This document shows positions 8,813 through 43,765 of a stretch of 53,282 nucleotides of DNA, in pieces. Under the pieces are notes generated by a model that saw only the letters and a program-made list of their open reading frames with translations, was not told the origin of the DNA and searched no databases. Source of the DNA: Chara braunii (taxonomy: Eukaryota; Plantae; Charophyceae); NCBI GenBank assembly GCA_003427395.1, contig BFEA01000016.1:3984377-4037658 (forward strand). Reading direction: 5' to 3'. Made by a program: the position numbers and the translations under genes. The stretch's first letter is position 1. Each line of letters begins with the position of its first letter.

Positions 8813-8907
8813 GACCAAGTCCCACTTACCCTGATTCTTAATTTCTGGGCACCGATCATAGTAATTTACGGTCAAAAGTAGAGAATTCGGGTAAGTGGGA
8901 CTTGGTC
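8813..8907. mobile_element. Short MITE
   Basis: TIR gaccaagtcccacttaccc / gggtaagtgggacttggtc; related to 48419-48622. Confidence 0.7.
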
Positions 8908-9099
8908 TCGGATCGGATAATCATGATAGAGTGGTTACCAGTGTTTATGTTGGGAACAATCGTTTGTGTGAATGCGACCTACCTTCTCTGATCGCATCGC
9001 ACTTTGTCCGTCGTGAGAGTGCAATCAGGGCAATCATGGCGGTCAAGGGTTCTCTAGTGACAAACTTAGATTTTGCTGAGGAATTTCGTTGATTTTTCA

Positions 9100-9299
9100 A
9101 TGGTAGGGGTTGTGGAGCTGGCTGTGGGGTGAAATCTAGTGGTGCCCTCGATGTGCTTGGCCGGTGATGCCTTGTCCACTGAGGGCCCCGCCTAATTTTG
9201 TGAGGGATGCTTGACCCGGTTCCAGGCTTTTATAAAGACTTGAGCATTTTTAAAATAAAAATAAATTAAAATAAAATAAAATAAAATAAAAATAAAAAA
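9100..9299 (+). mobile_element. Retroelement 3' tail fragment (5' limit uncertain)
   Basis: Degenerate family hairpin gggatgcttgacccggttccaggc at 9204-9227, followed by an A-rich tail at 9252-9299; same subtype as 16861-16897. Confidence 0.6.
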
Positions 9300-9371
9300 G
9301 CCTACGACTCGACTTGAACAGGAGGCATTTCTAGTATGAAGGGAATGCTCTACCACCTGAGCTACGTGAGC
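9299..9371 (-). pseudogene. tRNA pseudogene; anticodon now reads CAT in a broken stem, ancestrally Thr or Met; organelle-like
   Basis: GCTCACG-TA-GCTC-AGGTGGTA-GAGC-A-TTCCC-TTCATAC-TAGAA...TTCAAGT...CGTAGGC: cloverleaf with mismatched anticodon and T stems. Confidence 0.7.
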
Positions 9372-9383
9372 TCACCGAGAAAT

Positions 9384-9456
9384 TGGAGACGATTGGACTT
9401 GAACCAATAACTTCCTACTTGCAAAACATACGTTCTACCACTTGAATTACGCCTCT
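9384..9456 (-). pseudogene. trnA: tRNA-Ala(TGC) pseudogene, mitochondrial-like
   Basis: AGAGGCGTAATTCAAGTGGTAGAACGTATGTTTTGCAAGTAGGAAGTTATTGGTTCAAGTCCAATCGTCTCCA: 73 nt, TT-TGC-AA loop, intact T arm. Confidence 0.75.
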
Positions 9457-9646
9457 GATGGAATGAAAGAAATGAGATTTGAACTGGTTCAACTTCGTAT
9501 ACTACCATAATGAAGTTACCTTTTATTTAAATTTTGTATTTGGATAGGTTTTGTTTTCGCTTCTTTTGGAGGTTTCCGAAGTTTAATACGTCAGCAACAT
9601 ATAGCCAGATTTTATAACTGCCCTACAAAAGTTTTGAGTTGTGTTT

Positions 9647-9719
9647 AAAAATTTGGACAATTTTTCGATTTATGCGTGTCATTCTTGCGCAGGGGCCATG
9701 TTAATCTTCTCTGTATTGT
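9647..9719 (-). pseudogene. U6: U6 snRNA pseudogene, 3' ~73 nt only
   Basis: Reverse strand ACAATACAGAGAAGATTAACATGGCCCCTGCGCAAGAATGACACGCATAAATCGAAAAATTGTCCAAATTTTT: ACAGAGA box, ISL and plant-type 3' end; about 30 nt of the 5' end is absent. Confidence 0.95.
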
Positions 9720-10013
9720 GGTTGGGTAAATCCGCTAGTTTGCAAAAGCACGATAATGGTGGGAGTTGGTGTCTTTTGATGACGGAGAGTGTGAGTAGAG
9801 GTGCGATCTGCCCTGAATCGCGTAGAGGTGGGGGGGTTCTGCAGGGTCTACATCCGCAGTCGGGGGTCTGGGGATATGGACCCCTGCCGTGCGGGTGGCA
9901 GGACGGTTCTGCAGAGGGGGGGGAAGTTACCAGATGATAACCTTTTTGATTTCATTGTTTATCTCGAGTAGTGAAGTGTTTTGTTGGGTTTCGTAAGTTG
10001 TAGATTACAGCCG

Positions 10014-12830
10014 ACGACGTGCGAACAAACGTTATTAGCAGAGTTGCGTGGGATTCCATCATCCAGCCCAAAGCCACAGGGGGCCTGGAGATCGTAGACC
10101 CGGCTACATAGGTACAAGCCATGCGGCTCCAGTGGCTTAAAAAACTCATTCTTACCTTAGAGAGCCCGTGGAAAGTCTTGGCGTTGGAACACCTGGCTAG
10201 GCTGGCCCCGACAACCCACCCCGAAATACATCCCTTGACCTGGTTAGAGGAATGGTACTGGACCATACCTCGAAAATGGTAGACGGGGGGAGGACACGGG
10301 AAAGACGCTATGGACCAGTTATGACCCTCCTTACTCAAGACCTGCCGGAAACTCCCCCTTCCTGATAAGCAACCTCTAGAAAGATGGGAAAAAGTCTACC
10401 GTCAACCCCTCTTCGGGAATCGTTGGCTGGTCGATAGACACGGGCAGGTAAAGTGCAGTACGGCATCCCCCTACAAAGGATGGGTGAAGAATGGGGTAAC
10501 CCGGATAGGGGACCTATAATGGGACTCATACCTGAGGAGATGGAGAACAGGGGAGGAGTTGCGTAGCCGGCTAAAGTACTGTCACCTCACTGAGGCGAAC
10601 GTGGAGGAGTTACTGAAAACTGTTCCCTTGGCATGGTATAGAACCCTCAGAAAAGGCCCGGAGTTTAGACAGGGAGACTGGGTGGCCAGCAAAGGGGAGA
10701 CGGGATGCATAGGAATGATCCACAAAGTCAAAATCCAAGATGTACTAATTGAATGGTACACAGTTCGTAAGATGGGGTATTGCAGGTGAGCCACGACCCC
10801 TTCGAATGAAAGGATACAACTATTATCTTTAGGATCAGGGTGTTGGGGGAAGGGGAGGAGGCGGTCGCTTTCCAGCCAGACATCGACATCCAACACCTGG
10901 CCCTAGATCCACTGAAGTGGAGGTGGACTTCAGCCACACACAGAACAAATCCCCCCCGCTATATCTATCTGCAAAAAACATAGGATTCGTGAAAACCTAA
11001 CAAAACAAATTGTTAGGTTTGCACAAAATCTATTCAAGATTATGATAGTACGTTTTTCAGGTCTCCTCCAGGAACAAAATTCTACGTGAAGTGAAACATC
11101 CGCAAAAAAAAGAACAGAAAATTAAGTTTTGAAAACTACTAGAGGGGCGAAGAAAAAAATGGTTTTTTTCATAGAAAATCACGACCTGGTGAAGCACCGT
11201 AGGTTCAAGAACTTAAATATCCTGATTTTTTGTTATAAAAAAAAAATTGTGTTTATAGTCCTATAAGATGTGTAGCACGATGAATTTATTCAGGGGTTTT
11301 TCGAACGCGCAAATATATTCTCCTGTTCGTGAATACGTTCGCTTGAACATGGTTTCCCATACATGGGCGAATATATTATTTTTTATTGTTTTTTTAAATT
11401 TTTTTCCCTATATTTTTATTTTAAACTCGTGTTTGGCTAAGAATTTCAAGGTGTCTCTGAGGCAAAAGTTGTTTGTATTCTTATTTTAAACGACATAGAT
11501 TTTTTGATAAGGGTTTTATTGTTAAGTTCAAAAGTGATTTATAGTCCTATAAATTATTTTGTGCAAAGCTTGACTTTTACCTAACTGCAGAAACTGACTT
11601 ATAGTCCTATAAATGAGTATTCACCAAAGCACGTTTTTTTTTTACATCTTTCAAGTTTGCCTTGTCATCCTTAAAAATTACCCTAATTGAACTATGTTTT
11701 TTTGCCAATTTACTGAGAATGACTTATAGTCATATAAAAACATTTTGCAAGGAAGGGTTTTCTTGCACATTTTGAGGAACGCTAGACTTTTCACCTGATT
11801 TTTTGCCTCCTTTATCACAAAACGATTAAAAACGCTCTCTTTTTGTGTAAAAAATAACAGTTTGACTTTTACTTTTTCATTCTATAAGAAATGCCAGATT
11901 TTCTCCGATTGTGAGGTTTTCACGAATCCCCTGTTACAAGCTCTCAGTCAAATCCACATATAGGCTGTTGAGGCCCAAACGCCCACAAAGAGATGTAATA
12001 ATTGATGGATGGGTCAAACATCTCAAAGTAGAGAGGAGCATGCTCACATCGATTCGGTGGTTTAAGGAGGCCGCCTAAGATCTGCTCCCTACAATGGCAG
12101 ATTGCACATCGCTGTCTACCCACTATGGATTGGCTCATAAACCATACGAACCTCGAACAGAAAGGTCAGTCAGTGCCCTGGTGTCCACGGCTAAGATCTC
12201 CTTCCCCGTACAGAAGAAGACCGAAACTATAGAACACATTTTTATGCAATGCCCTGCAGCGCAGCTCATGTGGCGCTGGTGGGATAGGATATTGAGAAAT
12301 ATGATACCAGACCCTGCATGGCCATGGTCCTGGAGAGCCATCTTAACGGGTTATTGGCCACATGTGCAGAAAGAACCACCCTTCGTGGAAGACATGTATA
12401 GGCTGGGACGCAGGGCAATACTGTGGGGACTTTGGTGGCAACGCTGCTTAATGGCGCTCGAGGGGGTCCGGGTGGAGGGAACAGAGATAACTGACCAAAT
12501 CCTGCAACAGGTTCAAATGGAGATAATGAGGAGATGGCAGAAATTAAAGACCATGCTAGATCTTCTACAAATGACGAGGGACATTGAGCGAGCCATCACC
12601 TCCTTTTGCACCAACTGGCTAGGAGGTGTTAGAGGAGGTTGGATAACTAGAGTGGAATGGACCGGCAGAAAGGAAGGGACCCAACAACAGGAGAGGATGG
12701 AGTCACAAAATTACCGGTTGTTGTTTAATGATTGGACGACGATAGAACCCTCCTTCCCTCTACGTCCTCCACAGACTTCCCTGACCCCTTCCCCCCACAC
12801 CCACTTGCCCTTGCTGAGATTCCTGAGTGA
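10014..12830 (+). pseudogene. LINE ORF2 C-terminal remnant (post-RT region, zf-RVT-type zinc knuckle)
   Basis: PKATGGLEIVDP, VKSTYRLLRPK, ETIEHIFMQC, ILWGLWWQRC, DFPDPFPP; stops, frameshifts and an insertion at 10979-11933. Confidence 0.9.
10979..11933. mobile_element. Non-autonomous DNA transposon (hAT-like termini) inserted in LINE A
   Basis: TIR cataggattcgtgaaaacctaacaa / ttgtgaggttttcacgaatcccctg; AT-rich interior with 4 copies of ttatagtc(c/a)tataa; LINE coding sequence resumes on both sides. Confidence 0.8.
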
Positions 12831-13162
12831 CCCGACCCCTCCCCCCTCCTCGAGCCTGCGCACCATCTTCTTTGCTTGATTGCGCACTATCGTCCAAGGA
12901 TGGCCTTGCTTTCTGGTGGGCCTCTAGGAAGCAAGGATCGAGTGATTTGTTTTTGGTTACACGTGCTCCTGTTTTACAAATACACAGTAGGAAATATGAT
13001 AATGCAGTCTGGAGGGTAGGCAGGGGAAAGACCCCAGTGCGAAGAGGTTTTTCTTCTCTCTTCCTTTCTCAATGTTGGCAGACTCCTCAGTCAACTTCTC
13101 TGATATCTTCTTCAGATATCTTCTGATATCTTCCTGAGCCATCTGGAATTCCTTCTGTATAT

Positions 13163-13292
13163 GGGATGCTGGACCCGTTTTCCAGCAGGGGATGCTCCCT
13201 ACCAACAGATGGAGTCTCTCCTCGGGTGCTAGCGGTGTTTGTTTCTATAAGCACCACTAGCACTGCAGGGGGGGTTAAAAAAAAAAAAAAAA
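13163..13292 (+). mobile_element. Additional LINE-type 3' module and poly(A) inside the 3' UTR of A
   Basis: All three hairpins present, then A16; 5' limit and TSD not resolved. Confidence 0.8.
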
Positions 13293-14221
13293 GAGGTAGT
13301 CAATGTAGTCAATGCTGGTTACAGCGGCCGATTCCGTATTGAAGGGCGGCGGAGCGCTACCGGGAGCGTTCCGCCGCCGTCTGATGCTTGGGCGTAGCGG
13401 CGCTTCTCGATGGAGGTTGGAATTGAGGAACGGCCGAGGCGCTGCAACGGCGAATGCGACGCAAGGGGGAGGTGAGAGATGGATCGTGAGGTATGGTGGT
13501 GTGGGTTATTGGCGCCTGAACGAGTGGATGGTCACGAGGGCTGTGTATCCTACATCAAGGTCGTGGTCGAGAGGAGAAATATCACGGCAGGGAGTTAAGG
13601 GGAGGGGGATAGGGTTTTATGGTTTTGTGGAAGAGAGTTATAAGGAAGAAGGGAGGAGGAGGAGTGTGGGGGAAGGGTTTCCATAGGTGGGTGATGTCTG
13701 CAATGAGGATACCCCCTCATCTCTTTGGGCTACCCGCGAGGGGCGGCTGGCGGGTTCAGCGGTCTGGTCTCTCGACGTGGCTGGGTATGCTGCGACGACA
13801 ATCATAGCTGCGGTCCTGTTGTCATCATTGTTCGGTCTTTTCGGATGGTTGAACGCTTGTCAATCACAGGTGGCCGAGTTGCGCGAGTGCCGATGTATTC
13901 GAGGAGGTGAGGTTTGGAGGGAGGGGGTGTGTGTTTAAGGATGTAAAAGGTAAGTGGTGTTTTCCTCTTCGGTTGACCTTGATGAGATTTCTAGGGTGGA
14001 GACTCTCCTATAGTGTTTTACCTACTAGGTTTTCAAACATAGAATCTTCGATAGGTCATGCATATAAAACTGATAATTCTGATCCCGTAAATTCTTAGTT
14101 CTGTTTTTGAAATGGAATTTCTGACAAAAATCGATGGGTAGTTCGCAATTGTCATTGATTTGTGCTAGACTTTAGATTCCTTTGTTCTTTTCACATATAT
14201 TTTATCGCTGCTTTGTTGCTG

Positions 14222-14358
14222 CTAATTGGTATCCCTTGACTTACCATAAAAAACGATTCTTGGGACCTTGGGGTCCTATGAATCTGAATCTAATTGGTAT
14301 CCCTTGACTTACCATCAAAACAATTTTTGGGACCTTGGGGTCCTACGAATCTGAATCG
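14222..14358. repeat. ~69 bp tandem duplication inside E2
   Basis: ctaattggtatcccttgacttaccat...gggaccttggggtccta(t/c)gaatctgaat occurs twice. Confidence 0.9.
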
Positions 14359-15140
14359 AAAGTTGAGTCCTTTGGACATCACAGATGATTCACTCATTTG
14401 GTTTCAATTTCCATTCGAAGCCATTCTTCATGTGGAATTTAATTTCTAGATTTGTCATTCCTTTTCATTCTAAAATTCTAAAAGATGGTTAAGATAGAAT
14501 TCTTGAAATTCGGTTTTGATTACCTTTTTCCAAACTTAGGCCTCTGAAGAAATTCTTAGGGGTGTGAAGTTGGGATTGGGGATGGAAGGCAGTAAGGGGT
14601 TCTCAACAGAGGGGGGCCGTTGGTCAGGGTAAGTAGGCTAGAAGGACGGTGCTGGGACGACTCAGGCTGGTGCTGGAGCTTGTGCTCTGTGACCCGGGGG
14701 GAGCTTGAGGCCTGCGAAGTTATGCTGAGTGCATAACCAGACCATCCAACGAGGCTGGCGCCGGGGTTTTGACCCTGTAACCGGTTAGGGGCTTGCCGCT
14801 ACAGGAATTGCCGAGGGAGGAAGGCACTTCCTGACCGTTGGAATGAGTTTGGTCGGTAATGGGGAGGGTTGTGGTGCCCTGTTACCCTAGCAAAGAGGGG
14901 GTATGAGATCAAGTGAGTTTTGGTACGAAGACTGAAAGCCTGGACTGACACTTCGTCTGCTGAGGGGGGATTTTTGGATAGTAGGCGTTTTAGCTTCCCC
15001 CCCCCGTTCTCATAAAGTTTATAAATCTTAAAAATATTACGTCGTTTGGTAGTCCTAGATGGTCTTCAGGACTGTGAGATTCTTGCTAACTCATCCTGAG
15101 GTGGTTTCGAGATTGTTATACTCAGTGATTTGCAGTTGTC

Positions 15141-16082
15141 CGATGCCAGAACGACGCTGGCCGGTGCTGGGGATTTGCCCTGTAACCTGCAACGTGGGAG
15201 CATGAGGCCTGATAGAGAGATCTGGGGATGCTTTGGGGTGGGCATTCCACGGGACATCCAAGGGTTACTGTCGGGATGACGCTGGTCGGAGCTGGGGTGA
15301 GTCGTGTTGCCCTGTAACCCAGCGAGATATGGGTGGGAGACCTGGAAGAGCTCGGCAGGGAGTAAGACAGTTTTGGAGGACTTCAGAAGGATGCGTGAGG
15401 GACTTCAATGGTTTCTGGATCATTGCAGGACCCCTGCGGCCTATTCTTATGTTTTTTTCTACTGTATTGTGTTCTTACGTTAAGAAGATAATAAGGTGAG
15501 TGAGAGAAGGAAATGGTGGGATATCACGCGTTCTATCCGTGAGGGGGCTAGCTGGTAGGATGGGAGTATGGTACAGCAGCAGCAGAGATGGTGGCTCTGT
15601 TGCAGTTAGTCTTGTCGGAGGGAGGCGTAGAGGTGTGATGGGGGGTTCCTCTGAGTCGATTTCCGAATTTTGTTGTAGTCACTGCAAAAAAATTCTTAAT
15701 CTGGCCCTAATTTCTATGCCAATTTCGAAATGTTTCTGGATACTTTTGGTAGTCTTGAGAATTTTTTAGGACCTTGGGTACTCCTTGCAAAGCAGTCTAG
15801 GTTTCCTTGATGCTGTTTACTCATGGATCTGTTGGTTTTTCGATGCCAGAATGACGCTGGCCGGTGCTGGGGGATTGCCCTGTAACCTGTTAATAGCAGG
15901 AGCGTGAGGCCTGGTAGAGAGATCTGGGGATGCTTTGGGCTGGGCATTCCAAATTCCAAGGGAAAACCAAGGGTTGCTGTCGGGACGACGCTGGCCGGAG
16001 CTGGGGTGAGTCGTGTTGCCCTGTAACCTAACAGGGTGGGGGCATGAGGCCTGGGAGAGCTTGGCAGGGAGGAAGACAGTAT
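15141..16082. repeat. ~235 bp internal direct repeat in E2 (15141-15372 and 15841-16082)
   Basis: Both units start cgatgccagaa(c/t)gacgctggccggtgctgggg and end ggcagggag(t/g)aagacagt. Confidence 0.9.
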
Positions 16083-18968
16083 TAGAGAATTTTAGAGTGT
16101 TTTTTGTGGGGGGCTTCCAGGGNTTCTGAGCATTCGAAGGACTTCCACTAATTGCTGTTTGGATTTTTCTAGTAGTTCCTTGTCTATTTTCATGGAATTT
16201 TCTGATGATGGGACGCTGGGCCCGGTTCCCAGTTTGTGCCAAATTGAGAGGATATGGTTGTATCTATGGGACGCTGGACCCGGTTTCCAGCAGGTGTTGC
16301 TCCCCACCAATAGATGGAGCTGTTTAAAAAAAAAAAAAAATAAAAAAAAAATGTAGTCAATGCTGACCTTTTGAGTATTCTAGAAGCAACTGAGCATGAG
16401 GGTTCTGCATGCAACTCCCCTGATTAGTATCAGTCCCAAGCGGTCTATCTGACACCCTTTTATTAGGGTGAAGAGATACAAGAAGGGATTGGCTGCCCTG
16501 CATGCTCACACAAGGCTACTCTACTGGATATTCCCCTGGGTTTCAGGGCAATCAATGCTGGCAGACTCCATAGCCACTATAGCCACTATTCTCATAGGGT
16601 CTGCTCAGTCAATCCCCTGTTGTGCAGGGTAATCAATGCTGGCAGATCTCACAAGTCACTGTTTTCACCTTCTCAAGATGTTTTTCTTTCAAGGGACGCT
16701 GGACCCGTTTTCCAGCTCCCCACTAATAGATGGAGCCTCTCCCCAGGTGTTAGTGGTGCCTGCTCTTACTAGCAGCACTAACACCGGTGGGGGTGTTTAA
16801 AAAAAAAAAAAAAAAAGAGAGATTACAGTCGGTCTTCTTGGTCACTAACCTTGTTTCTCATGTGAGGAACGCCGGACCTGGTTTCCAGCTTTTATAATGC
16901 GATGGCAACCATGGTATGAACCTGGCCGGAGTGCATGGATCATACCCGGAAGGTTGCCCTTAAAAAAAAAAAGAAAAAAAAAGAAGAAGTTTGAGTTGTG
17001 TTTCTTTTTCTTTTTTTCTTTTTTTTTTAATCCGTGGGGAATATAAAAGTGCTGAGGGAAGTGAAGAGTTTACCGAAGACATCAATTATGGTAAGAGGTG
17101 ACAACAAGAGACTCGCCGAAGAGGGACATCGACAGCCTCAGGATCCCTCTCCAATCGTGCACAGAATCTGTGTGTAGTCCCGGTAAACCGCAGTAATCAA
17201 TCCGAGGAGCAGTTGTGACTGAAGGCCGTCTCGAAATTCATAACAGACTGAATCTTCACGATTGGGGGTATGGACATTGCCGGCGACGATATCAATAAAA
17301 CCATCTCCTCAATCCCACAGAGCCATGTCCATCTTCCCGTACCATAAGCAAGCTATCCCTCAACCCCCATCTTTCCAATTGCGAAAGCAATACTTCAACT
17401 ATCCAGCTTCCGCAGCGAAGCCACGATATCAACGATGTTGCGGCCGAAACCCGATATATTGCAGCGCTCGATCCTCGCCGTCCGATCGTCCCCACAGTAG
17501 TCACTCTTTTTTTTTTATAACAAAACAACCCCCGCCAGTGATAGTGGTGCTGGTAAGAGCAGACATCACTAGCACCTGGGGAGCAGCTCCATCTATTGGT
17601 GGAGAGCATCACCTGCTGGAAAACGGGTCCAGCGTCCCATATACAGATCGTAACAGAATATGCGAATGTGTAGAAAGCCTGCCAGCATTGATTACCCTGG
17701 GGTCCAGGGGATAGACTGAGCAGGTTATTCGGGGCGAAGGGGGGGAGAGAATCTCCTCACCCAAAACTGGCGCCAGATCTCTGCTTCTACATGCTAATTC
17801 TTCCCTCCCCTCACACAAATCAAAAAATTGTTTTACACATAGAAACTCTGTTCCACTAAGCACAGTGACTCCGGTGACTGGCATGCAATGGAGGGGGGAT
17901 GGGGAGCCGGAGAAGGCATCTGGCAGACAGCATGTCCTGGTGTGGACCAGAGAGTCCGGTGTCTGGGTGAGTCTGGCTGCCCCTGTCTGGAAGCGGGCAC
18001 AACTTGCAAACTTGCAACTTTGCTCTGAGGCTGTGCTGGCATGTTGGAGCTCCTGCTGGCTTTTACTTCACTAACTTACCATGACTTGCAATAAAAGAGA
18101 CTGTAATGTGCTGAGGCTTTAGGGGTTAGGGGGTTAGATTGTACTCCCCAAAACCCNNNNNNNNNNNNNNNNNNNNNNNNNNNNNNNNNNNNNNNNNNNN
18201 NNNNNNNNNNNNNNNNNNNNNNNNNNNNNNNNNNNNNNNNNNNNNNNNNNNNNNNNNNNNNNNNNNNNNNNNNNNNNNNNNNNNNNNNNNNNNNNNNNNN
18301 NNNNNNNNNNNNNNNNNNNNNNNNNNNNNNNNNNNNNNNNNNNNNNNNNNNNNNNNNNNNNNNNNNNNNNNNNNNNNNNNNNNNNNNNNNNNNNNNNNNN
18401 NNNNNNNNNNNNNNNNNNNNNNNNNNNNNNNNNNNNNNNNNNNNNNNNNNNNNNNNNNNNNNNNNNNNNNNNNNNNNNNNNNNNNNNNNNNNNNNNNNNN
18501 NNNNNNNNNNNNNNNNNNNNNNNNNNNNNNNNNNNNNNNNNNNNNNNNNNNNNNNNNNNNNNNNNNNNNNNNNNNNNNNNNNNNNNNNNNNNNNNNNNNN
18601 NNNNNNNNNNNNNNNNNNNNNNNNNNNNNNNNNNNNNNNNNNNNNNNNNNNTTTGAATAGTTTCCATATATTAGAATTGCTGGAAAGCGGGTCCAGCGTC
18701 CCTTGACATATAATGATGAGTGATTGAAACCAAAGATGCTGGGAAACGGGCCCAGCGTCCCCTGTACCTCTTCACCCTCATCTGAGTCGCGCCAGATTCC
18801 TAGTCATAGATCTAGTACTAATTTGAATAAATGCTCCTGATAAAAGTGATGAATCACATGGAGGCTAAGTTAACCAGCTACTGTTCTGGTCTAACTTGCA
18901 GCAAAACCTAGTAAACATCTTTTTCCAAGGCACCCGGTGCTGAACCGGGTAGATAGAAATAGTATTTC

Positions 18969-38834: not shown

Positions 38835-41800
38835 ATGGCTATATGGCAGAAATAAAGTTTGGAAGCAAGTGCTACAGTTAGCTGATCTGGACCTGAGATC
38901 CATAAATGTAAATGGATTGGCGTCACAAAACAGGGACAAAAACCAAGCCTTGTGGGACCTCATGCGGAGGTTGGGGGGAAGGGCCTGGCCAGACGTAGTG
39001 TGTGTGCAGGAAACCCACTTGATGGACACACCTGAACATCAGAGAGCGCACAACGACGCCTGGCCTTTCGAAGGGTACAGGGCACATACCCCGAGTCCCG
39101 GGCACGCGGGAGTAGCAATCTGGATACCGCCAGACTCGCGGTTTGAGGCAGTCTATTGGAAAACTGACAAGGAGGAAGGGAGATGGGCTATGGTGCTGGG
39201 AACATTAGAACTGGAAATGATATGTGTCCTGTCGATATATGCACCCAATTCCATAAGGGAAAGAAGGATCTTCTTTGAGAAAATCAAACAGATCCCTCCA
39301 CCAAGCATCCCCATCATTTTAGCTGGAGATTTTAACGCTGCACCGGATCGGTGGCTGGACCGATGGAGGATTACCCCCTCCACAGCGCACAACACGGAAG
39401 AGGACGAGGGACTCTTAACTTAACTATGCGAAACGCTAGAAATCTTCGATACCTTTAGGAGAGTGCACCCCACCGGCAAGACATTCACCTGCATTAGAAA
39501 CAACAGTCCCGAGCGACTTTCTAAATCAAGAATCGACTTGATCCTTGCCTCACACGAACTTGCAGGAGGGTTAACAGTACCGACAATACTACCCCTAAGC
39601 CCCTTTTCCCGGCTTGGACCACAAAATGTGCATAGCTGTGTTCACCTTTCCTAGACGGCCGGATAAAGGGCCGAGGTTCTACAAACTCAACACTTCACTC
39701 CTCAAGCTCCGCTCCTTCCGAGACTACTTAGCCCAAAGCTGGCAGTATTGGAAGGAGAGGAGGTCGGAACTGAACTCACAAATCGCCTGGTTTAATAATG
39801 GCCTTTTTTTATCACCAGAAAATGCAAAGAATACTCCAAAAGTGTGGCAGCACAACGCTTTCAACAAGAATTTGAAATTATGCAGCAATTTTTCGATCTC
39901 GAACAGCAAGAAAATTCGCATGTACAGGAACAAAGAAGCCCGACACTCCAGCACCAAATCGAGAACCTCCAAACCCGGCTGTCACAACACGCGCAATACA
40001 GATGGCAAGGAACCAGAATACGGGGAAGATTAACAACTCACACGACCGAAGGAACGATCGATTCCCGCTTTTCTAACTTAGCCAAAGCACAAATAAAACG
40101 TGCTACGATCGAAGCTCTCTATGATCCGGATGAACCAGAGGGGATGCCAACGTTGACAACAGCCCGCTGCATGAAGATCACACGGGACTTCTTCAAGGAT
40201 CTATTCTCAACCCACATTGATATCGCAGACAATGATACACGACACAGAATGATAGACGACTTCCTACTCCCTATGGAAAAAAGACTCTCCCAGAAACAAC
40301 GCGATCAATTGGAGGCCCCCCTCTCCAAACAAGAAATATGGACTGCACTCCTACAGATGAAGGAAGAAAAAACGCCCGGAATGGACAGTCTCCCTAAAGA
40401 GTTTTGGGAAACCTCCTTGGATTTTATGAGCGCAGATCTAATGGAGTACTATAACGAGGTTTGGAAAGGCGCTGAGATGGGGGAGATGGTAGGGCAAGGG
40501 GTGCTGACCTTACTGTATAAAAAGGGGCACAAATTAGATATCAAAAATTATTACGTTACTCACAGTCGTCTACAAGATGTTAGCCAAAGTTTTGGCCAAC
40601 AGGATGATTCCAGTACTGGAGGACATTATTCACCCGTCTCAGACTAGATTCATGCAGAACAGAGACATACAGGAAAATGTTCTGCTAGTGCATGAAATAC
40701 TACAGTTGACCGGGCACTCCCAGCACAACGTCGTGATCATCTTCATAGACTTTGAGAAGGCCTACGACCACGTAGACTGACTTTTTCTTGAAAAATGTCT
40801 GGAGAAGATGAATTTCAGACCGCACTTCAGAAGATGAGTCAGAATCCTCCACCAGAACGCAACGACATGCATACAGGTCAATGGGTCATTGGGACCCCCC
40901 ATTCGACTGGAACGGTCGGTGCGTCAGGGGGATCCTATCGCCCCCTTCTTATTTTTGATCATTATGGAAGCCCTGACGACAAACTTGCGGGCAAACAAGG
41001 ATATCTCTAGAATCCGGGTCTCCCACATCCCTGAAGAAGCGGTCCCGGTATGCTCCCTGTTTGCCGATGACCTAACGATAATGGTGGAGGCAACTCGGCA
41101 AAATATGGAGGAAATTCACCACATGATGGACAAATTTGCACAAATCTCTGATATGAAAATAAACTGGGGCAGCAAAACACAGGCTGGTGGATCCACTACC
41201 AAAGCGGCCGGCCCCCAGAGACACCAAGAATTAGGTGGTTACCGCTGGAGGCACCCCTACGAATTCTAGGGATAACCATGACTGCACAAGGCAAACCAAC
41301 CACAAATGATGCATGGATCAGCACCCCGGCCTTGAACAAATTGTCTGAATGGAAAAACAAACACACGTCAATCTTTGGGCGGGCCCTGATTCTAAACAAT
41401 GTGGTCTTTGCATCCCTCTGGTATAAATCTCTTCTCTGGCCCCTAAGCAAAAGGGCGTTAAAGGAATTGAAATCCAAGGCAACCGCCTTCCTTTGGCGAG
41501 GAGACAGCGAATGCACGCACGTGATCAGCAGGGTAGCATGGGATTCAGTCACACAACCGAAGGTAGGCGGTGGACTAGGGATCATCGACCCGACCATACA
41601 AAGTCAAGCGTTGCCACGTCAGTGGATCAAAAATCTGATCTTCTCGCCCCGAAGCCCCTGACCCCCCCTGGCCTTAGAACACCTGTCCCGTCTAGCACCG
41701 GAAACCCCCCGAGGGACCCACTCGCTGAGATGGATAGACAACAAGTTCAGGGCAATCCCGCGGAGGCTACCGAGGAGGCTGCCAGACCAGCAATACGGAG

Positions 41801-43765
41801 GGGAGCAGACGGGACGGCAAGAAGATGAGTTCTGGCCGGACCTACTTAAAACCTGGCGCAGACTCCCGCTTCCTGACAGACCAGACCCGGACCGTTGGGA
41901 GGAGGTCTTCCGCAAGCCCCTCTTTGGGAACAAAGGGATCACGGACACGCAAGGACGGGTAATGATGTGCTCGGCTTCTCCATGGGAAGGCTGGGTAAAA
42001 CGGGGGATCCTTCGAGTGGGAGACCTATGGGACTGCGAGAGAAAAAACTGGAAGGGGATAGAACAACTGAGAGCAACACTCCGATACTGTCATCACGCAG
42101 AGCGTCACTTAGATCAGATAATTGAAAGTATCCCCTTGGCATGGTACCAAATACTGAGACAAGGACCATCAATAAAAGAAGGGGACTGGGTAGCCCGCNT
42201 TGGACTAACAGGAAAGGTTGGTAGAGTACATATGACAGACACACAAAAAGCCTTGACAGAATACTACANTGTAGGACACAAGGGCACCCTCCAAGAAAGT
42301 AGAGACCCCTTCCAATGGGTGGACAAAACAGAGCTAATCAGAACCAGAGTGCTGGATGAAGGAAAGGGATGGTCAGCCTTCTATCCAGACAAAGACANTC
42401 GGGACCTGCCTTTTGACCCGGAAGAGTGGCNTTGGAAACTCCCACAAGGACAATCAGGGCATACCCCGAAATGGCTNTATTTACACAAACTGACAGTCAA
42501 ATCCACTTACAGAATGCTACGGCCCAAACGACACCTGAGGGACCAAATAAATGACCGTTGGGCCAGACATCTAAATGTGGACATCAATCTTCTCAANNNN
42601 NNNNNNNNNNNNNNNNNNNNNNNNNNNNNNNNNNNNNNNNNNNNNNNNNNNNNNNNNNNNNNNNNNNNNNNNNNNNNNNNNNNNNNNNNNNNNNNNNNNN
42701 NNNNNNNNNNNNNNNNNNNNNNNNNNNNNNNNNNNNNNNNNNNNNNNNNNNNNNNNNNNNNNNNNNNNNNNNNNNNNNNNNNNNNNNNNNNNNNNNNNNN
42801 NNNNNNNNNNNNNNNNNNNNNNNNNNNNNNNNNNNNNNNNNNNNNNNNNNNNNNNNNNNNNNNNNNNNNNNNNNNNNNNNNNNNNNNNNNNNNNNNNNNN
42901 NNNNNNNNNNNNNNNNNNNNNNNNNNNNNNNNNNNNNNNNNNNNNNNNNNNNNNNNNNNNNNNNNNNNNNNNNNNNNNNNNNNNNNNNNNNNNNNNNNNN
43001 NNNNNNNNNNNNNNNNNNNNNNNNNNNNNNNNNNNNNNNNNNNNNNNNNNNNNNNNNNNNNNNNNNGAATAACTGGCTGGTTGACCGTACACACTTGGAA
43101 CAGAGGGGGGAATTGTTACCATGGTGCAAACGCTGCTCTAATTGCTTCCCGTCACACAAGAGGGCTGAGACAATCGAACACGTGTTCATGCAGTGCCCGA
43201 TTGCCCAGTTCATTTGGAGAAGTTGGGAACGTATCTGAAAGAAGATGGGAACCTCAGCCCCCTGACCCTGGTCATGGCAGACGATACTGGCAGGTCACTG
43301 GCGACCAGTAGAAGATACCTCCACCTTCGAAGACAATATGTTCAGATTAGGGAGACGGGCAGTGTTATGGGCCTCATGGTGGCAACGATGCCTGCTTGCT
43401 CTAGATAAAATCCAAATAGATTCAGCAGAAATCATGGAACAAATAAAACAACAGATCCAGATGGAAATAACACAAAAATGGCAAACTTTGAAGCCACAAC
43501 TCAGAAAAAGGACATCAAGAAAGCAATCACTTCTTTCTGCCAGGAGTGGTTAGGAGGGGCAAGGGGAGGATGGATAGCAGAGGTAAAATGGAGCGGGGAC
43601 GACGACAGCTTAGACGACCACCAAGACTTAGAAAGGAAGAGGGACTATAAACTGCTGTTTAAAGACTGGCTGAATATTGAACCCTCATTTCCCCTATGCC
43701 CCCCTGCTACCTTCCTGGACCCCTTCCCGCCCCACCCCCTTTCCCTGACTGAGTACGTCACATAA
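38835..43765 (+). pseudogene. LINE D ORF2 (EN, RT, zinc knuckle), disrupted
   Basis: SINVNGL, VCVQETH, SIYAPN, ILAGDFNA, SRIDL, DFEKAYDHVD, VRQGDP, LFADD, WCKRC...ETIEHVFMQC. Confidence 0.95.

What the first reader, a model, noticed from the sequence alone, without database searches (positions are those of the whole stretch)
9629..17003. Inverted U6/retroelement chimera: antisense U6 3' end joined directly to the left TSD
Seen: left TSD (9629-9646) is followed immediately by AAAAA, the complement of the U6 oligo(U) end, then 73 nt of antisense U6, a sense retroelement tail, poly(A) and the right TSD (16987-17003; 14 bp exact plus aag with a 1 nt indel). Established: the common mammalian U6/L1 chimeras carry U6 in sense at the 5' end, and twin priming normally inverts part of the same L1 RNA. 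Inference: each nicked target strand primed cDNA on a different RNA 3' end (element poly(A) and U6 oligo(U)), and the two cDNAs were joined head-to-head, i.e. twin priming in trans in a plant-lineage L1.
Basis: partly seen in the sequence, partly recalled or inferred. Interest (0 to 1): 0.8.

Follow-up and report, generated by a model that had tools for sequence, protein, structure and literature searches.

The report
Backwards U6 fused to LINE tail
A dead, backwards copy of the splicing RNA U6 and the tail of a LINE-type jumping gene entered this stonewort-type genome as one unit inside a single duplicated target site, a rare arrangement already described in mammals, and four later insertions then piled into it.

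Summary
A 5'-truncated U6 copy lies on the minus strand at 9647-9720. The complement of its U tract abuts the left copy of a 14-bp exact repeat (17 of 18 with the aag extension). The right copy directly follows a poly(A) tail at 16986.

The 7.3 kb between the repeats is a nest. A 5'-truncated L1-like LINE, a TIR element, a LINE 3'UTR fragment and a 3-kb retroelement each inserted later. Two of them have clear target duplications of their own.

With these removed, the original unit is about 520 nt. It holds antisense U6 (74 nt), 293 nt of unknown origin (X), a sense LINE-type tail with the family's conserved hairpin, and poly(A).

One event with two templates is the best explanation: poly(A) RNA primed at the bottom-strand nick and the U6 3' end primed at the top-strand nick.

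This model is already published for mammals (Doucet 2015; Cell Genomics 2026). The case is therefore a new member of a known kind. It differs in lineage and in having an intact U6 3' end at the target duplication.

I could not test whether the junction recurs in the genome. Unchecked first-reader notes report similar composites elsewhere in this genome.

The parts
9629..9646 (.). Left copy of the outer target-site duplication (aag + one extra T + the exact 14-mer)
   Evidence: (D20)
9647..9720 (-). 5'-truncated dead U6 retrocopy (about U6 nt 33-105). The complement of its terminal five U directly touches the left duplication.
   Evidence: Rfam 67.8 bits, alignment
9721..10013 (.). Segment X, 293 nt of unknown origin and orientation. 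Its last 12 nt (10002-10013) are the left target duplication of the nested LINE-A. It was contiguous with 16832 onward before that insertion.
   Evidence: No relative in the window, Rfam or the protein database; junction
10014..13295 (+). Later nested insertion LINE-A: a 5'-truncated L1-like ORF2 3' part plus 3'UTR, with poly(A) at 13277-13292. Its own duplication AGATTACAG[C/T]CG lies at 10002-10013 and 16820-16831 (11 of 12).
   Evidence: tblastx collinear with the + strand LINE at 41503-43762; junctions
10977..11935 (.). AT-rich element with 27-nt terminal inverted repeats, nested in LINE-A; it interrupts the ORF2 homology
   Evidence: (I5)
13296..13317 (+). 5' start of nested LINE 3'UTR fragment F, which continues at 16366
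13318..16350 (+). Later nested insertion E, a 3-kb poly(A) retroelement with an exact 15-bp duplication ATGTAGTCAATGCTG at 13303-13317 and 16351-16365
16366..16819 (+). Rest of F with its poly(A) at 16799-16816. F sits in the tail of LINE-A, so its duplication is A-rich (...AAAGAG) and only weakly testable.
16820..16831 (.). Right copy of the LINE-A target duplication
16832..16960 (+). Segment G: sense LINE-type 3' tail carrying the conserved first hairpin (16866-16889). Together with X it forms the poly(A) partner of the chimera.
   Evidence: D2; alignment A1 with 14 invariant columns across 8 tails; fold
16961..16986 (+). A-rich tail of the chimera (A runs with three G)
16987..17003 (.). Right copy of the outer target-site duplication
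17004..17030 (-). T-rich tract of the right flank, probably the poly(A) tail of an older minus-strand insertion. It is part of the original target, not of the chimera.
   Evidence: (I4)

Best explanation
This is a single LINE-mediated integration that used two RNA templates, that is, twin priming in trans.

An L1-like endonuclease nicked the bottom strand at CTTTT/G. That 3' end primed reverse transcription on the poly(A) tail of a LINE-type tail RNA (G, probably with X). After the top strand was cut 17-18 nt away (GTGTTT/C), its 3' end primed a second cDNA at the very 3' end of a U6 RNA. That cDNA stopped near U6 nt 33. The two cDNAs were then joined head to head.

The result was: target duplication, antisense U6, X, sense tail, poly(A), target duplication. 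Later a 5'-truncated LINE inserted into X.G, a TIR element into that LINE, a LINE 3'UTR fragment into the LINE's tail, and a 3-kb retroelement into that fragment.

Shown here: the parts, their orientations, the duplications and the nesting order. Inferred: which end primed on which RNA, and how the cDNAs were joined.
For: - The outer repeat has 14 exact bp and 17 of 18 with the extension. It is found only at these two places in the window, against 1.4e-4 expected. It sits exactly at the U6 3' end and at the end of the A tail.
- U6 lies in the opposite orientation with a complete U tract at the junction, as expected if cDNA synthesis began at the RNA's terminal nucleotide.
- There is no second duplication around U6. 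The sequence right of the truncated U6 end does not repeat the sequence left of it.
- Every interior poly(A) element is accounted for as a later insertion. E has a 15/15 duplication and LINE-A an 11/12 duplication, and LINE-A starts exactly where ORF2 homology starts.
- G carries the hairpin that is invariant in seven other sense tails of the window.
- The LINEs of the window have an APE-type endonuclease and an RT closest to human L1 ORF2p among solved structures.
- The same model is published for inverted snRNA/L1 chimeras in mammals.
Against: - This is one old locus, with no empty site and no second copy to compare.
- X (293 nt) between U6 and the recognisable tail is unidentified. The head-to-head joint may lie inside X, and a third template cannot be excluded.
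- The top-strand 3' end (TTT) has no complementarity to the U tract. Priming would have been without pairing, or on a short A tail that cannot be seen.
- In the mammalian cases the inverted snRNAs are 3'-truncated with internal priming, which is not the case here.
Confidence: 0.65

Rival explanations
1. This is a daughter copy or a 5' transduction. An already composite RNA (antisense U6 pseudogene + X + tail), transcribed from another locus, was retrotransposed as one ordinary sense template. No second priming took place at this site.
For: X is unidentified and could be flank of a source locus. Unchecked scan notes describe U6 pieces fixed inside repeat families of this genome (s1-529360, s1-565562; s1-561824).
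Against: The insert begins exactly at the last U of U6. A read-through or 5'-truncated cDNA has no reason to end at that nucleotide. There is no second copy of X or of the joint in 53 kb. An antisense U6 supplies no promoter.
Confidence: 0.12
2. A free U6 cDNA fragment was captured by end joining. A U6 cDNA made elsewhere was ligated in random orientation between the left target end and the 5' end of the LINE-tail cDNA during repair of the integration intermediate.
For: It gives the same final geometry. Filler DNA at LINE 5' junctions is known (general knowledge). X could be further filler.
Against: A free cDNA that starts at the terminal U still needs a primer, and none is visible. The target 3' end is the simplest primer. 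The complete U tract sits flush with the duplication, with no extra bases.
Confidence: 0.1
3. There were two independent target-primed insertions. The LINE-type tail inserted first, and a U6 retrocopy later landed exactly between its left duplication and its 5' end, or in the reverse order.
For: U6 retrocopies are reported to be very dense in this genome (unchecked notes). A follow-up elsewhere found a neighbouring U6 and retroposon each with its own duplication (s1-572220).
Against: A later minus-orientation U6 insertion at that nick should duplicate the bases left of it (…GAGTTGTGTTT) on the right of U6. The sequence there is different. The reverse order would put the left duplication to the right of U6. 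The outer duplication encloses both parts.
Confidence: 0.05
4. The repeat arose by chance, or the assembly is wrong, and there is no common duplication at all.
For: The repeat is T/G-rich and lies between A-rich and T-rich tracts.
Against: The exact 14-mer is expected 1.4e-4 times per strand of the window, and it sits at both predicted boundaries. Four DNA runs of one sample hold 53-62% of the sampled words of 9300-10300; this sample may be the one the assembly came from, so it is not independent support.
Confidence: 0.03

Closest known systems
Inverted snRNA/L1 chimeras formed by twin priming on a second RNA (Doucet et al. 2015, PMC4476161, Fig. 1 and Group IV)
   Same: The snRNA lies in the opposite orientation to a 5'-truncated LINE part. 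One target duplication encloses both. The snRNA abuts the 5' duplication. The cleavage site fits the LINE endonuclease when read in the LINE orientation. One U6/L1 case is listed there.
   Different: The mammalian snRNAs are 3'-truncated, with internal initiation helped by complementarity to the target. Here the U6 3' end with its U tract is intact, the 5' end is truncated, and no complementarity is visible. The host is a charophyte-type genome and the partner is a tail with a family-specific hairpin.
Antisense 5S rRNA, tRNA-half and U5 chimeras with human LINE-1 (Cell Genomics 2026, PMC13174262)
   Same: Antisense orientation is taken there as the signature of two reverse transcriptions started at opposite ends of the break. 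tRNA halves appear to be primed at the 3' end of the RNA fragment.
   Different: In that human catalogue 98.3% of 180 U6/L1 chimeras are in sense orientation, so antisense U6 is the rare exception. No plant-lineage data are given.
Canonical sense U6/L1 chimeras (template switching, or RtcB ligation of U6 to L1 RNA; PMC6789731)
   Same: U6 is combined with a LINE 3' part inside one target duplication.
   Different: In those chimeras U6 is full-length, in sense orientation, and its 3' end is joined to the LINE part. Here it is antisense, 5'-truncated, and its 3' end is joined to the target.
[quoted passage not shown]
   Same: The top-strand 3' end primes a second cDNA, which gives an inverted segment next to the 5' duplication.
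   Different: In the classical case both cDNAs copy the same LINE RNA. Here the inverted segment is a different RNA.

Membership tests
LINE-mediated (target-primed) retrocopy | Target-site duplication of 7-20 bp flanking the whole insert | tested here: met
   14 exact bp, 17 of 18 with the extension, at 9629-9646 and 16987-17003
LINE-mediated (target-primed) retrocopy | A-rich tail directly before the 3' duplication | tested here: met
   16961-16986
LINE-mediated (target-primed) retrocopy | T-rich/purine first-strand nick site of an APE-type endonuclease | tested here: met
   The bottom strand reads CTTTT/G at the left edge of the duplication. APE-type endonuclease and L1-like RT are present in LINEs of the window. 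The site preference of this particular family was not measured.
Twin-priming type inverted snRNA/LINE chimera (Doucet 2015) | snRNA and LINE part in opposite orientation inside one duplication, with the snRNA next to the 5' duplication | tested here: met
Twin-priming type inverted snRNA/LINE chimera (Doucet 2015) | snRNA 3'-truncated, with complementarity between the snRNA and the target at the junction (internal priming) | tested here: not met
   The U tract is complete at 9647-9651. The target end TTT cannot pair with U.
Twin-priming type inverted snRNA/LINE chimera (Doucet 2015) | No separate duplication around the snRNA alone | tested here: met
   The sequence right of 9720 does not repeat the sequence left of 9647
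Canonical sense U6/L1 chimera | Full-length U6 in the same orientation as the LINE part, with the U6 3' end joined to the LINE | tested here: not met
   U6 is on the minus strand, 5'-truncated, and its 3' end is joined to the target
Functional U6 gene | Full-length RNA with conserved catalytic positions | tested here: not met
   The first ~32 nt are not U6-like, and conserved positions are changed in the Rfam alignment
Fixed U6-containing SINE or composite family | The same U6/partner joint in many copies | not testable with these tools
   There is one copy in 53 kb. No loci of this genome could be fetched.

The most novel reading that the evidence does not exclude
In this stonewort genome the L1-like machinery may regularly start a second cDNA on the 3' end of U6 (possibly a short-A-tailed form) at the top-strand nick. 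Two-template twin priming would then be a routine integration route and one source of the reported extreme density of U6 retrocopies. This locus would be one of many such head-to-head composites with different partners and different U6 breakpoints.
Probability: 0.2. Interest if true: 0.6.

Novelty: new member of a known kind. Interest (0 to 1): 0.35.

Why it matters
Twin priming on a second RNA has so far been inferred only from a handful of mammalian loci. A clean example made by an L1-like element of the plant lineage suggests the behaviour belongs to the enzyme class and not to mammalian L1 alone. The intact U tract at the junction suggests initiation at an RNA's terminal nucleotide without visible base pairing. 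That bears on how these reverse transcriptases choose templates at the second nick. If the similar composites noted elsewhere in this genome are real, Chara would give enough cases to study the process statistically. Taken alone, this locus is a decayed insertion with no expected function.

Tried and rejected
- Identity of X (9721-10013): blastn and tblastx against the window, Rfam at E<=5, folding of both strands (z -1.2 and -2.8) and a protein search with its 71-codon open frame all gave nothing usable.
- Fetching other loci of the genome: a protein search with the 573-aa LINE endonuclease ORF gave no hit at E<=1e-20. There was therefore no route to other loci and no census of U6 copies.
- Other U6 pieces in the window: none at E<=1.
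- X as an inverted part of the same LINE (classical twin priming): no ORF1/ORF2 similarity on either strand.
- The 9721-9751 stretch as a diverged U6 5' end: rejected, because the 3' 73 nt differ from the consensus at only about five positions while the 5' 32 positions barely match.
- A target duplication for the minus-strand tract right of 17004: not found.
Full report
**What is there.** Rfam places U6 on the minus strand at 9647-9751 with 67.8 bits against a gathering score of 44. In the alignment only U6 positions about 33-105 (window 9647-9720) match well, with about five differences, four of them G to A on the U6 strand. The first 32 model positions barely match. The copy is therefore 5'-truncated and dead. 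It ends in five U, read as AAAAA at 9647-9651 on the + strand. No other U6 piece exists in the window at E<=1.

**The outer repeat.** Directly left of the AAAAA lies TTTGAGTTGTGTTT (9633-9646). The same 14-mer recurs exactly once, at 16990-17003, directly after an A-rich tail at 16961-16986. From the window's base composition, 1.4e-4 exact copies are expected per strand. The next best matches to the left flank are 10-mers. Both copies are preceded by aag, and the left copy has one extra T. This is a real target-site duplication of 17-18 bp. It is bounded on the inside by the U6 complement on the left and by poly(A) on the right.

**The 7.3 kb between is a nest.**
- tblastx shows that 10013-12828 is collinear with the ORF2 3' part of the + strand LINE at 41503-43762. 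This LINE-A starts at 10014 and ends in poly(A) at 13277-13292.
- LINE-A is flanked by AGATTACAGCCG (10002-10013) and AGATTACAGTCG (16820-16831), an 11 of 12 match.
- Its ORF2 homology is interrupted at 10977-11935 by an AT-rich element with 27-nt terminal inverted repeats.
- After its poly(A) comes a LINE 3'UTR fragment F (13296-13317 plus 16366-16819). The duplication of F is A-rich and only weakly testable.
- F is split by the 3-kb element E (13318-16350), which has an exact 15-bp duplication ATGTAGTCAATGCTG. This agrees with the scan's note s1-567382.
- Removing these layers joins 10013 to 16832.

**The original unit.** It was about 520 nt long and consisted of:
- antisense U6 (74 nt);
- X (9721-10013, 293 nt);
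- G (16832-16960);
- poly(A).

G carries the first hairpin motif, which is invariant in seven other sense-oriented LINE-type tails of the window (14 invariant columns, alignment A1; D2). G is therefore a LINE-dependent 3' tail in sense orientation. X has no relative in the window, in Rfam or in the protein database. Its origin and orientation remain unknown.

**The machinery.** LINEs of the window encode an APE-type endonuclease and an RT. Among solved structures both are closest to human LINE-1 ORF2p, at E 8e-9 for the endonuclease and about 1e-15 for the RT. Earlier notes of this scan name the genome as Chara braunii and report very dense U6 retrocopies, mostly A-tailed. I did not check these notes.

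**Mechanism.** For a sense-oriented poly(A) insert, the first nick lies on the bottom strand at the left edge of the duplication. Here it reads CTTTT/G, a T-rich site whose four T can anneal to poly(A). The top strand was cut at GTGTTT/C. The top-strand piece that ends in the duplication is exactly what is joined to the complement of the last U of U6. The simplest account is that this 3' end primed reverse transcription at the terminal nucleotide of a U6 RNA. That cDNA stopped near nt 33 and was joined head to head with the cDNA of the tail RNA.

The terminal TTT of the primer cannot pair with the U tract. Initiation was therefore either without pairing, or on a short A tail that would be hidden in the TTT of the duplication. 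This last point is speculation prompted by the unchecked notes on A-tailed U6 copies.

**Rivals.**
- A later independent U6 insertion at that nick should have duplicated the bases left of it on the right side of U6. They are not there. The reverse order would place the left duplication to the right of U6.
- A read-through or daughter copy of a pre-formed composite does not explain why the insert starts exactly at the last U. It cannot be excluded without a genome-wide search.
- Capture of a free U6 cDNA by end joining gives the same geometry but needs an unseen primer.
- A chance repeat is excluded by the numbers above.

**Comparison with what is known.** Sense chimeras arise by template switching or by RtcB ligation (PMC6789731).

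Twin priming on a second RNA is, however, already published. Doucet et al. 2015 (PMC4476161) describe inverted U5, U1, U2 and one U6 chimera with L1 inside one duplication and draw exactly this model. The 2026 catalogue extends it to 5S rRNA, tRNA halves and antisense mRNA pieces.

This locus differs in three ways:
- the U6 3' end is intact and the 5' end truncated, whereas the mammalian cases are 3'-truncated with internal priming;
- no target complementarity is visible;
- the host is in the plant lineage. Two full-text searches for snRNA/LINE chimeras or twin priming in plants listed no such report.

**Verdict.** The novelty is that of a new member of a known kind. First-reader notes report similar head-to-head U6 composites elsewhere in this genome (s1-555290, s1-570464, s1-529563). 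None has been followed up. A census would decide whether this is a regular route in this genome.

Noticed in passing
window 9299-9520, minus strand: Two tandem tRNA-like sequences: Rfam 40.5 bits at 9384-9456 with a UGC-type anticodon loop, and 26.7 bits at 9299-9371 with a CAU type. A third piece resembling a tRNA 3' half lies at 9461-9520. ARAGORN calls none of them. They are AT-rich and lie directly after an (AAAAT)n-type tail, so they may be a decayed tRNA cluster or an organelle-derived insert.
   Followed up: partly
window 16960-17030: The A-rich tail of the chimera and the T-rich tract of the right flank are 86% complementary over 29 nt, with similar spacing of their G/C interruptions. 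The right target duplication is the 13-nt spacer between them. The arms do not extend into the neighbouring bodies. This is probably chance, but it is unexplained.
   Followed up: partly
window 13296-13317 and 9998-10013: Both nested LINE-type insertions landed in a similar short motif of a LINE 3'UTR: E in ATGTAGTCAATGCTG of F, and LINE-A in AGATTACAGCCG of X.G. Both duplications end in GCYG. The two sites are only about 9 of 14 alike, so a target preference is no more than a hint.
   Followed up: no
window 10977-11935: A 959-bp AT-rich element with 27-nt terminal inverted repeats (89% complementary) interrupts the ORF2 remnant of LINE-A. No clear target duplication was seen.
   Followed up: no
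window 9647-9720: All four differences of the U6 copy from the Rfam consensus at conserved positions are G to A on the U6 strand (C to T on the + strand). There are too few of them to test for a strand bias.
   Followed up: no
window 8900-9298: Another sense LINE-type tail with the same hairpin-plus-CTTTTATAA subtype as G ends in an (AAAAT)n-like expanded tail, 330 bp upstream of the chimera.
   Followed up: partly
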